Assembly: GCA_001643675.2 (NCBI GenBank)
Contig: LSRY02000002.1
Span: 1,550,001-1,614,000, forward strand
From: Monocercomonoides exilis PA203
Taxonomy: Eukaryota; Protista; Preaxostyla
Reading direction: 5' to 3'
Length of the DNA: 64,000 nt
Shown here: positions 43,401-46,400 of the stretch, piece after piece
Numbering within the stretch: the first letter of the stretch is position 1
Layout of the letters: each line of letters begins with the position of its first letter
Notes under the pieces: model-generated
What the model saw: the letters and a program-made list of their open reading frames with translations, nothing else
Databases searched by the model: none
Told to the model about the DNA's origin: nothing
Made by a program: the position numbers and the translations under genes

Positions 43401-46400
43401 CAATCATATCGCTGATTGAACCTCGCAAGACCTGTGCAAATAATGAGATAAAAGAAAAGCACGAAAAAAGTGGTAGCAAAATATCGGACGCTGAAATAAA
43501 AGGAAAAGAGGAAAATAATAGCGAAATGAAACAGGATACAACATCGCTTTTATGCGGAGCACGGAGGATTGGGCAAAGAGGGGCTGATGCAGCTGTGGCG
43601 ATTGTTGGGGTGCGCCAAATTAGAGAAGGAGCAGAAGCAGGTAATGTTGAAGTTATTCTCAACAACTGCACTGAAATGACGCGAGTGCATGCGTTTGGGA
43701 CTCGCTTTGTAGGTTCATTTGACCCAGAGATGCAGCTGACTGCAGTGAGGCATGTGAGGCAGGCAGAGGTGACAACAGCAATGGCAGCCAGCTCGTTCTA
43801 CACATCTGACAACCGGCTGGGCACTGAGCAGGAGTACATTCAGCGAAGACAATCATCTGCAGCGCGTTTGGGCAACACTTTGGATGCGCCGTCTGTGCTG
43901 ATGCATCCAGTTGTCACACAAGAAACCTCTCGAAAGGAAGCAACTTCGTATAGCAGCGACGCCATTTATGGAGGAGCTACAAATGGAGCGTTGATGGCAA
44001 AGATGAAATCTAAGGAGTTTAAACGACTATCAAGTCAGGATAGTAGGACAGATAATTGGAGAGAATGTAAAGTTGATCGGAAAAACATAGACTTCCTTAC
44101 AGATACTACTACAGTGATACTGAACCAGCCTGTGGGAGTTGGGCAAACTCAGCGTGTAGTGATTCCTTCTCAGGTGATAGGGCAGAAAGGACAGAGCACT
44201 CTGACTGTGGTGGCAACAGACGACGAGCACGTCGTGGCACGTGTATTGGCGGTAGATCTGAGCCTGTGCAGTGGAAGAAAGAAAGTGGAAGGAGAAGAAG
44301 AAGAAGGCCAGCTGAGAGAAATGAGACTGATGAACGCGTTTGACCCGAAGAAGCATGTTCTTCAGAAGATGCATTCGGCGCTGATTCTACCAAAGAAAGT
44401 GTTGAATGACAGCTGTTGCGAAGCTTGCAATGAAAAGGAGAAAGAGGAAAAAGCAGCAACAAGCTCTTCTTCTGCTTCATCTGAATGTGCATGCGCAAGC
44501 AGAAATTCGAATGGAAGTGTCTCGTTGAAAAAAGCATATCTTTCCAAGTGTGTTGCATCGCGCACGATTGATGATCTGTCAACATCAACATATGAAACGT
44601 ATAGTTGCTTTGGTGGAATTCTCCATCTGCTGAAGTGTTTGATGAAAGCCGACTTGAAGAATGAAGCTCCAGTCGGAACGTTTGACGCGTGGTGTGATGC
44701 ATTTGAGGAATTGTACAAGCTGGTTGATGAAGGAAAAGATGAAGGCGAGAAAGAAAGAAAGAAGAAATACAGAGAGCTTTGCGAACGATACAGCGAATTT
44801 GCATGCCATGAGACAAATTTGCTGCTGTACAAAAAGGCACCAAAATTCTTTGAGCAGGCGATACGTCCGGCTTTAGCAAGCAAAAAGGAGAAGACGGTGA
44901 TTGATCACTATCTTCTTGCTACGGAAGATGTGGAACTGTTTGAGGAGTATGCAGAGCCGGCTCTGTTTGCGCAGTTGAACGCAGTGGAGCAGGTGTTTGT
45001 TCTGGCAAGATTGGTTGCGCTGGGGCAGGCAGAGAAGAAAGCGGGAAGAGGAGACGAACTGCTGAAGAGGAGTGTGGCCAGATGCGTTGCGCTGGTGGAG
45101 AAAGTAGAAGGAAAGCTAAAGGCAGAACAGAGAGGCAAAGAAGCGGAAGAAAGATTATTTAAAATGGCGCTTAAGTCGGGGTTGGATGTTGGGGAGTTGA
45201 TTGAAGCGGAGAACGAAGAAGGAAAGAATGATGCAAGCAGAAAGAGCGGAGTGAAGGAAGCGTCTGCGCGAGCATTCAACGAAGGAGAGGATTTGGGCCA
45301 GATGTTGATTTTTGCGAAAACAATTACAGGAAAGTGTCTTCCCTTTTTTGTTAAACGAAATACAACTGTTGAGGAATTGAAGGATATGATCTGTCGCAAG
45401 GAAGGCATCCCTCCTGACCAGCAGAGGATTATATCAGAAGGGAAGCAACTGGAAGATCGTTACACTATGGGTTATTACAATATCAAAAACAAAACAACAT
45501 TGCATCTTGTGCTGCGCTTGCGTGGTGGAGGAACTGGACCTGAACTGATGCTAGATACAAGCCTCACGCGCGAATCGGCTCCGATGGCTGCGGGATTCGG
45601 ATTCGCTCCGCAAATGTTAATGCGGAGCGTTCAAAGTCGAAGTATGAACTTTGCTGCTCCTGTTTGTTGTTCAGCAGCCCCACCGCCAATGCCGATGCCG
45701 ATGAAGATGAAGATGGCAGTGCAGAATGTGCATTATGACTATGATGCCGAAGAGGAAGAGATAGCTCCGGTTGCAAAGTTCCAACAAGTTGAGAATACAA
45801 AAGAATACCGCGAGAACCAATACCATCGCGTGGCTAATGGAGATGGATGTCTCCTTGGATGGAACGAGTTCTTCTTGGATTATGCAAAATATCTCTTTGG
45901 GTGCATGGCTGATGGAATAGGAGCTGATGCATCTGATTGCGCAAATTGCGTTCCTTTTGTATCTGCGAATGTTTTAGATTGTGCCGACTCTTTTTCCTCT
46001 GCAGCGTTTGCTGCAGCGTTGACCGATGTTTCACTGTGCCCTATTTCAGTTGAGAAGGCGATTCAAATGAGCGGTGGAAGAGCAAGTGCTTCTATTTCGA
46101 GCGAAAACACAGCAGCTCTGCTTTATGTGAAGGAGATGGAAGCGGTTGAGGAAGGAAAAGAAGATTCGGCGCAAGAAAGAAAATCAATGAGAACAGAAAA
46201 GCAGGAAGAAAAAGCCAGCGGCAAAATTGTGCAGATGAAGCAGGTTCTGGTGCAAGAATTTGTATGCGACATGGCGGAGGAATGGGAGGTGAATGAGGAA
46301 GGGCGAAGAACAAGGAAGTATGTGGACTGGGAGAAGATGTATGTTGGGAGAGTGTATATGTGCGATGTGGTGCTAACGAACACAACAGCAACACAGAGGT

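What the first reader, a model, noticed from the sequence alone, without database searches (positions are those of the whole stretch)
45302..45529. Complete, potentially cleavable ubiquitin embedded in a 2,665-aa macroglobulin-like protein: DUB bait or giant conjugatable modifier
Seen: an exactly 76-aa ubiquitin (45/76 identical by hand) lies at residues 1621-1696, between flexible linkers. It keeps R42, I44, K48, H68, V70, R72, R74 and the full LRLRGG followed by GTGP, and has lost K29 and K63. Substitutions cluster in residues 12-32 and 53-65, while the face read by E1 and DUBs is conserved. Established: DUBs cut after LRLRGG in linear fusions, and integral UBL domains usually lose the GG. 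Alpha-2-macroglobulins are triggered by cleavage of a central bait region. Inference: cleavage would give a ~1,700-aa N-fragment ending in a free ubiquitin C-terminus (potentially E1-activatable) and a ~970-aa C-fragment. This would be a DUB-triggered switch or trap, or a very large ubiquitin-type modifier.
Basis: partly seen in the sequence, partly recalled or inferred. Interest (0 to 1): 0.88.

Follow-up and report, generated by a model that had tools for sequence, protein, structure and literature searches.

The report
Ubiquitin bait inside a CAGE subunit
A giant hollow-cage protein of a gut protist carries a whole ubiquitin, cutting site intact, in a floppy loop; similar inserts arose separately in a ciliate's cage protein and in the bait site of amoeba protease traps, which suggests cells use ubiquitin as a lure for ubiquitin-removing enzymes.

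Summary
In detail: a 76-aa ubiquitin (45/76 identical, ending LRLRGG|GTGP) sits at aa 1621-1696 of an intact, unspliced 2,665-aa Monocercomonoides exilis ORF. The host is a CAGE/AbpF protein (hollow homotetramer, function unknown), A2M-like by structure only and without a thioester. The ubiquitin is a lineage-specific insert in the family's most variable loop, within the helical domain at the TED-like position, not the canonical bait site (about aa 1162-1214). All four full-length ubiquitin-bearing paralogues keep GG (two types, 42% alike); 0 of 50 comparably diverged control ubiquitin copies do. A probable rumen-ciliate CAGE gained ubiquitin independently in the same loop (ending G76A). Two amoebozoan A2Ms with a CxEQ motif have ubiquitin with LRLRGG in place of the bait. 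I found no paper describing any of these. Best reading: a DUB-readable bait whose cleavage nicks but does not split the cage (0.45); a non-cleaved docking handle is the main rival (0.25); a giant conjugatable modifier is unlikely (0.05). No cleavage is shown. My look-ups found no earlier scan note on this insert.

The parts
40442..48439 (+). Single-exon ORF, 2,665 aa (298.6 kDa), CAGE/AbpF family subunit without signal peptide
   Evidence: RNA-library contigs without joints over the laid part 42800-48589
40442..41701 (+). N-terminal all-helical region (aa 1-420; CAGE domains 1-2)
   Evidence: AF2 model of aa 120-1290, pLDDT 81.8, helices to aa ~417; domain list in PMC12485934
42125..44263 (+). 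Run of beta-sandwich domains collinear with MG1-MG6 of A2M/TEP/CD109/C5 (aa 562-1274)
   Evidence: Foldseek top 50 all A2M/complement/TEP family, best E 1.6e-10; VIA Z 10.7-13.4, e.g. model 442-1154 vs human A2M 29-788
43925..44083 (+). Variable disordered loop inside the split MG6-like domain (aa 1162-1214): the position equivalent to the A2M bait region; holds no ubiquitin
   Evidence: column conservation 0.28 vs 0.63/0.46 either side; pLDDT<50; inference
44609..45181 (+). Helical domain, N-terminal part (CAGE domain 11), in the place TED takes in A2M; no CxEQ motif
45182..45301 (+). Charged linker before ubiquitin (start of the hypervariable loop aa 1581-1781)
45302..45529 (+). Ubiquitin-derived domain, type A, ending LRLRGG; predicted DUB site after nt 45529
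45530..45784 (+). Met/Pro/Ala-rich disordered linker after ubiquitin; starts GTGPELM (predicted new N-terminus)
45785..45814 (+). Conserved [10 protein letters not shown] strand that closes the loop; probably one strand of the three-segment CAGE domain 9
   Evidence: mapping to domain 9 inferred
46235..46630 (+). Beta-sandwich (aa 1932-2063) whose best structural match is the C-terminal part (MG7 to end) of bacterial A2M
   Evidence: VIA Z 10.6, rmsd 2.8 A over 124 residues to 4ziu; Foldseek E 1.7e-4 to Salmonella A2M
46631..48436 (+). C-terminal helical domains and final beta domain (CAGE domains 13-15), no A2M counterpart

Best explanation
The gene encodes a subunit of the cytosolic CAGE homotetramer. 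An ancestor of one M. exilis paralogue clade gained a ubiquitin in the long variable loop of the helical domain, and selection has kept its C-terminal tail readable while the rest of its surface changes quickly. Most likely the loop works as bait: a deubiquitinase binds the ubiquitin and cuts after GG. Because domains on both sides of the loop fold together, the cut nicks the subunit (190 + 109 kDa) without releasing either half, and the cage holds or responds to the enzyme as A2M does to a protease, but non-covalently because there is no thioester. Shown: sequence, position, family, lineage-specific gain, tail retention, recurrence in two other lineages. Inferred: folding of the domain, cleavage, location of the loop inside the cage, any trapping or shape change, and the target enzyme.
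For: Insert in the least conserved loop of 143 aligned homologues (conservation 0.23; median 114 aa). GG kept in type A (LRLRGG) and type B (PRMLGG), 42% alike, at the same junction; 0 of 50 control copies at <=65% identity keep GG. Independent gain in the same loop in a probable rumen-ciliate CAGE (P0314). In Acanthamoeba and Luapelamoeba A2M, ubiquitin with LRLRGG fills the canonical bait site between A2M_BRD and PF00207, a CxEQ motif is present, there is no signal peptide, and their N-terminal UBL has lost GG. CAGE is collinear with A2M by structure and its describers list 'protease trap' as a possible role. DUBs cut ubiquitin that has proteins fused on its N-terminal side, and any P1' except Pro (PMC9703124). 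The domain evolves faster than its scaffold (dN/dS 0.38 vs 0.13-0.17, Fisher p=0.03), as baits often do.
Against: No cleavage, trapping or conformational change has been shown for any CAGE. The ubiquitin is not at the canonical bait position. No thioester. The ciliate version ends G76A in all 6 cluster members that cover it, which only partly allows cleavage (PMC3270276). Type B has lost R74, R42 and H68. Housekeeping DUBs would cut an exposed LRLRGG at once, so a bait needs shielding. Ubiquitin with GG also sits inside VIT-vWA proteins (P0313, P0315), so the insert is not confined to macroglobulin folds. Faster change also fits relaxed selection.
Confidence: 0.45

Rival explanations
1. Non-cleaved docking handle: the domain mimics monoubiquitin to recruit ubiquitin-binding proteins, a DUB, the proteasome or p97, or to load cargo into the cage. 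The tail is kept because binders read it.
For: G76A in the ciliate CAGE with I44, K48, H68, V70, R72, R74 all kept; type B tail PRMLGG is a poor match to LRLRGG; a loop inside a cage may be out of reach of DUBs.
Against: Integral UBL handles normally lose GG (established; 0/50 controls; N-terminal UBLs of P0310/P0311), while here the I44 patch drifts (H68D, V48, K68) and GG stays.
Confidence: 0.25
2. Constitutive processing site: housekeeping DUBs nick every subunit during or soon after synthesis, as for ubiquitin-ribosomal fusions or pestivirus ubiquitin inserts, serving maturation or turnover with no trap function.
For: Intact LRLRGG, P1' Gly, disordered flanks; over 100 USP-domain matches in the genome; natural internal ubiquitin inserts exist in a pestivirus polyprotein (P0312; PMC13517609).
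Against: Nearly 300 homologues, including four paralogues in the same genome, do without it; does not explain ubiquitin at the bait site of thioester A2Ms or G76A.
Confidence: 0.15
3. Neutral passenger: a ubiquitin gene piece landed in a tolerant loop and is slowly decaying.
For: The loop tolerates almost any sequence (47-282 aa); the domain is the fastest-changing part of the gene's 3' half; ubiquitin-like copies are abundant in this genome (80 matches).
Against: dN/dS 0.38 and 0.10 within pairs, exact 76-aa length and GG kept across saturated dS; tail 11/11 vs 34/65 elsewhere, p=0.002; recurrence in other lineages.
Confidence: 0.08
4. Giant conjugatable modifier: after the cut, E1 activates the new ubiquitin C-terminus and the 1,696-aa fragment, or the whole cage, is ligated to substrates.
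For: Type A keeps I44, V70, R42, R72, R74, GG, the residues E1 reads (established).
Against: The fragment stays in a ~1.2 MDa tetramer; type B and the G76A version lack the E1-competent tail; F45S/A46E alter the surface; no natural precedent known to me.
Confidence: 0.05
5. Assembly or splicing artefact.
For: None found.
Against: RNA and DNA contigs cross it unbroken; same junction in three other full-length paralogues and many fragments.
Confidence: 0.01

Closest known systems
CAGE complex / AbpF (McCafferty et al., bioRxiv 10.1101/2025.09.22.677704, PMC12485934)
   Same: Full-length homology to proteins in the paper's own homologue table (Capsaspora XP_004345165.2 = P0039, Limnoglobus WP_149110087.1 = P0234); same helical/beta domain order; no signal peptide.
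   Different: Carries a ubiquitin in the gap of domain 11. Neither preprint version mentions ubiquitin. About 450 aa longer than Tetrahymena CAGE1.
Alpha-2-macroglobulin / TEP / complement superfamily
   Same: Collinear MG1-MG6-like run with a split sixth domain holding a variable loop, a helical domain inside a split beta domain, then a match to the C-terminal beta domain.
   Different: No sequence similarity, no CxEQ, extra helical N- and C-terminal domains, cytosolic; ubiquitin lies in the helical domain's loop, not at the bait.
Ubiquitin-bait A2M of Acanthamoeba castellanii (XP_004339850.1) and Luapelamoeba hula (found here)
   Same: Internal ubiquitin with LRLRGG in a macroglobulin-fold protein lacking a signal peptide.
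   Different: True A2M family by Pfam, ubiquitin replaces the canonical bait, CxEQ present, ubiquitin 57-67/76 identical to canonical. Annotated in databases, but I found no paper on the bait.
Ubiquitin precursors and processed UBL fusions (polyubiquitin, Ub-eL40/eS31, SDE2) and pestivirus ubiquitin inserts
   Same: Linear ubiquitin or UBL ending in GG that is a DUB processing site.
   Different: Precursors have ubiquitin at the N-terminus; viral inserts are near-identical host ubiquitin and release a product. Here the domain is diverged, central, and flanked by halves that fold together.

Membership tests
CAGE/AbpF | Sequence homology over most of the length to listed CAGE homologues | tested here: met
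   P0039 hit at E 5e-73 and P0234 at 1297 bits; both are in the paper's table. Dictyostelium AbpF and Tetrahymena CAGE1 themselves were not retrieved.
CAGE/AbpF | Helical N-terminus, beta-sandwich run, split domains, A2M as top structural hit | tested here: met
CAGE/AbpF | Hollow D2 homotetramer of about 1 MDa | not testable with these tools
   only monomer pieces up to 1,200 aa could be folded; no coordinates returned
CAGE/AbpF | Eukaryotic members lack a signal peptide | tested here: met
   crude hydropathy check: 1.4 vs 2.2-2.5 for bacterial members
A2M/TEP | Pfam A2M domains or sequence similarity | tested here: not met
A2M/TEP | MG1-MG6 domain run in the same order | tested here: met
   structure only: (rmsd 5-14 A, so domain packing differs)
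A2M/TEP | Thioester motif CxEQ in a TED domain | tested here: not met
   none in this protein; 3 of 253 homologues have any CxEQ
A2M/TEP | Cleavable bait inside MG6 | tested here: inconclusive
   variable disordered loop at the equivalent site (aa 1162-1214), but the ubiquitin is elsewhere; cleavage untested
Processed ubiquitin/UBL fusion | Ubiquitin fold ending in RxRGG, next residue not Pro | tested here: met
   LRLRGG|G
Processed ubiquitin/UBL fusion | Cleaved by a DUB in vivo | not testable with these tools
   no proteomics available
Conjugatable ubiquitin-like modifier | E1 activation and conjugation after processing | not testable with these tools
   tail residues present in type A only

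The most novel reading that the evidence does not exclude
Protists have repeatedly built cytosolic deubiquitinase traps by putting ubiquitin into the bait loops of macroglobulin-fold cages (CAGE twice, thioester A2M once), as a defence against foreign or selfish DUBs. In M. exilis the target could be the USPs encoded by its own transposons, one family of which carries a captured piece of this very gene. CAGE would then be a cytosolic A2M-type protease trap.
Probability: 0.25. Interest if true: 0.93.

Novelty: new variant of a known kind. Interest (0 to 1): 0.82.

Why it matters
CAGE is a widespread megadalton cage with no known function. A natural variant with a defined, enzyme-specific cutting site in its variable loop gives a direct test of the 'protease trap' idea. 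The amoebozoan A2Ms found on the way look like covalent DUB traps by anatomy alone (ubiquitin bait plus CxEQ, no signal peptide) and occur in a culturable host of DUB-secreting bacteria. If either works as predicted, it is a new way for cells to sense or neutralise deubiquitinases and extends macroglobulin-type trapping into the cytosol.

Tried and rejected
Sequence links from CAGE to A2M or any solved structure: none; the CAGE structures are not in the PDB copy. Ubiquitin in other CAGE homologues: none among about 300. ESM Atlas feature searches gave only generic A2M clusters or nothing; the atlas fold search gave TM<0.3 by query. A metagenome scan for more ubiquitin-bait A2Ms gave only two Acanthamoeba-like pieces; L037 does read from the BRD end into ubiquitin. 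The IQ-TREE run did not finish, so the tree is FastTree only and no one-clade test was done. Rejected: intron or mis-assembly; 'ubiquitin sits at the canonical A2M bait site'; 'E1/DUB face conserved in all copies'; single origin of the two CAGE inserts (needs at least 5 losses). The 12 differences in DNA run X6 at 44443-44557 all match paralogue L016, so they are not editing.

Full report
Observation. Window 45302-45529(+) encodes a 76-aa ubiquitin-like domain (PF00240 E=2e-20) in frame within ORF 40442-48439, 2,665 aa. Against canonical ubiquitin it is 45/76 identical. R42, I44, K48, H68, V70, R72, R74 and LRLRGG are kept, K29 and K63 are lost, and identity is 14/33, 16/19, 4/13 and 11/11 over residues 1-33, 34-52, 53-65 and 66-76. 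L8I and F45S/A46E also alter the surface near I44. Single contigs from three RNA libraries (44177-46798 or 46422) cross the domain with no difference or gap, and a DNA contig spans it too. That excludes splicing and mis-assembly; it does not prove transcription, as the tool warns, although the RNA contigs end 100-150 nt past the stop.

Source and family. The genome is 82.3 Mb in 101 contigs, and paralogue L019 has the length and alignment of M. exilis MONOS_12768, so this is Monocercomonoides exilis. Searches with the non-ubiquitin parts return about 2,100-aa proteins of planctomycetes and verrucomicrobia and 'Actin-binding protein F' of Blattamonas and Paratrimastix. This is the CAGE family: a hollow, ~1 MDa homotetramer of unknown function solved from Tetrahymena and Dictyostelium (PMC12485934). 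Two of my hits are in that paper's homologue table. I did not retrieve AbpF or CAGE1 themselves.

Is it macroglobulin-like? Not by sequence, but clearly by structure. A model of aa 120-1290 (pLDDT 81.8) has A2M/complement/TEP/CD109 chains as all top 50 Foldseek hits (best E 1.6e-10). Its aa 562-1274 align collinearly with the MG1-MG6 run, for example human A2M 29-788 (Z 10.7-13.4). A model of aa 1100-2290 (pLDDT 69.6) hits bacterial A2M first (E 1.7e-4), aa 1295-2062 against 1021-1644 (Z 10.6). So the order resembles A2M: MG run, a helical domain where TED would be, a C-terminal beta domain. There is no CxEQ thioester. The site equivalent to the A2M bait is a variable, disordered loop at about aa 1162-1214. 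The ubiquitin is about 400 residues further on, in a second and even more variable loop (aa 1581-1781; median 114 aa in 143 homologues, range 47-282), which matches the gap in CAGE domain 11. The paper's domain 9 is built from three distant segments; three strands at matching spacing appear in my model (aa 1156-1161, 1787-1791, 2186-2189). If that mapping is right (inferred, no coordinates available), the two variable loops start and end on the same small sheet and lie next to each other. Because domains 9, 10 and 11 use residues from both sides of the loop, a cut after GG would nick the subunit (190 + 109 kDa) without freeing either half.

History in M. exilis. The genome has eight full-length paralogues. 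Four lack ubiquitin, as do the Streblomastix, Blattamonas and Paratrimastix homologues. Four have it at the same junction: type A (this gene and L016, LRLRGG) and type B (L018, and L017 with one stop at aa 1941; PRMLGG, 31/76 to canonical), 42% alike. The domain is under purifying selection (dN/dS 0.38 and 0.10 within pairs) but changes faster than the nearby scaffold in the type A pair (0.13-0.17; Fisher p=0.03), and L016 has K48R and H68D. What stays fixed is the length and the GG. As a control, 0 of 50 ubiquitin copies at 65% identity or less in nine multi-ubiquitin array proteins keep GG (copies not independent, ungapped register).

Recurrence elsewhere. A search of long proteins with the ubiquitin region (only 162 candidates, so not exhaustive) found three things. 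(1) P0314, a CAGE (1,073 bits) only 21% identical to this protein, has ubiquitin in the same loop, ending LRLRGA in all six cluster members that cover it. Its contigs are single-gene and 21% GC, and one starts with a CCCCAAT-type repeat, the rumen-ciliate telomere (10.1101/2022.01.05.474053), so it is probably a rumen ciliate. In a FastTree tree without the ubiquitin, each ubiquitin clade is sister to ubiquitin-less proteins with support 1.0; two gains are simpler than one gain and five losses. (2) True A2Ms of Acanthamoeba castellanii and Luapelamoeba hula have ubiquitin (57 and 67/76, LRLRGG) filling the whole gap between A2M_BRD and PF00207, the canonical bait site. They have ECSEQ, no signal peptide, and a second N-terminal UBL that has lost GG. 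(3) Two VIT-vWA proteins and a pestivirus polyprotein also carry internal ubiquitin with GG; these show the insert is not confined to macroglobulin folds. No paper holds the term sets macroglobulin/ubiquitin/Acanthamoeba/bait or macroglobulin/bait region/ubiquitin/deubiquitinase/trap, and neither CAGE preprint version mentions ubiquitin. The library lacks most subscription papers.

A side lead. The middle of the type B gene (aa 933-2066, with its ubiquitin, now broken by stops) is cargo in about 13 copies of a 15-21 kb element with 35-bp terminal inverted repeats. USP domains lie inside two of these elements (C91, C13), and the DNA just upstream of that USP is in the same place in about a dozen. 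Other agents describe USP-bearing Sola2 transposons in this genome; I confirmed the USP and the TIRs, not the Sola2 assignment. A DUB-encoding element carrying a piece of a possible DUB bait may be chance gene capture, but it names a candidate target.

Mechanism. Most likely (0.45) the ubiquitin is bait: a DUB binds and cuts it, the cage stays whole, and the enzyme is held or a shape change follows. DUBs do cut ubiquitin with N-terminal fusions and any P1' but Pro (PMC9703124). Against this stand the lack of a thioester, the non-canonical position, G76A in the ciliate (only partly cleaved, PMC3270276) and the degenerate type B tail. These keep a non-cleaved docking handle at 0.25 and constitutive processing at 0.15. 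Neutral decay (0.08), a giant modifier (0.05) and artefact (0.01) fit poorly. Every step from cleavage onward is inference.

Verdict. A real feature; a new variant of the CAGE family, working like an A2M bait by analogy but not an A2M member. Interest 0.82, for the three independent gains, the testable handle on CAGE function and the ubiquitin-baited thioester A2Ms. No step needed referral.

Noticed in passing
P0310 aa 1367-1442 (L040) and P0311 aa 1429-1504: Amoebozoan alpha-2-macroglobulins with ubiquitin (LRLRGG) replacing the bait region, ECSEQ thioester motif, no signal peptide and an N-terminal GG-less UBL. Deserves its own study; the clearest candidate for a covalent DUB trap.
   Followed up: partly
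L036:149-7129, L039:132-7130: CAGE gene on single-gene AT-rich contigs (probable rumen ciliate nanochromosome) with ubiquitin ending G76A in the same loop.
   Followed up: yes
G000 C17:246920-263122, C80:571641-587757, C26:944659-961780, C44:752191-769030, C19:1227276-1243410, C91:1915506-1930632, C13:20159-41242: TIR elements of 15-21 kb that encode a USP domain and carry a broken 3.8-kb piece of the type B CAGE-ubiquitin gene; other repeat families carry further pieces (L031, L035, many aa 516-697 fragments).
   Followed up: partly
P0313 aa 1311-1386, P0315 aa 1069-1144: VIT-vWA proteins, one PARP4-like, with an internal ubiquitin ending LRLRGG after the vWA domain.
   Followed up: no
   Followed up: no
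window 58252-59295 (-): ISXO2/IS1595-like (Merlin-type) transposase, Pfam E 1e-23; lies in the transposon nest noted by the first stage.
   Followed up: no
window 12955-13004: 50-bp stretch 82% like the TIR of the USP-bearing elements.
   Followed up: no
window 21313-28095 (-), 30016-35448 (+), 13720-18567 (+): Long ORFs of 2,260, 1,810 and 1,615 aa with no Pfam family (weak TPR only in the last).
   Followed up: no
window 60413-61024 (+): Peroxiredoxin (AhpC/TSA), Pfam E 3e-29.
   Followed up: no
window 44443-44557: One DNA run's contig has 12 differences that all match paralogue L016: assembly crossover or local gene conversion. Identity to L016 also varies from 66% to 98% along the gene.
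   Followed up: partly
P0166 aa 1338-1546: A bacterial CAGE with what looks like another folded domain inserted in the same loop.
   Followed up: no
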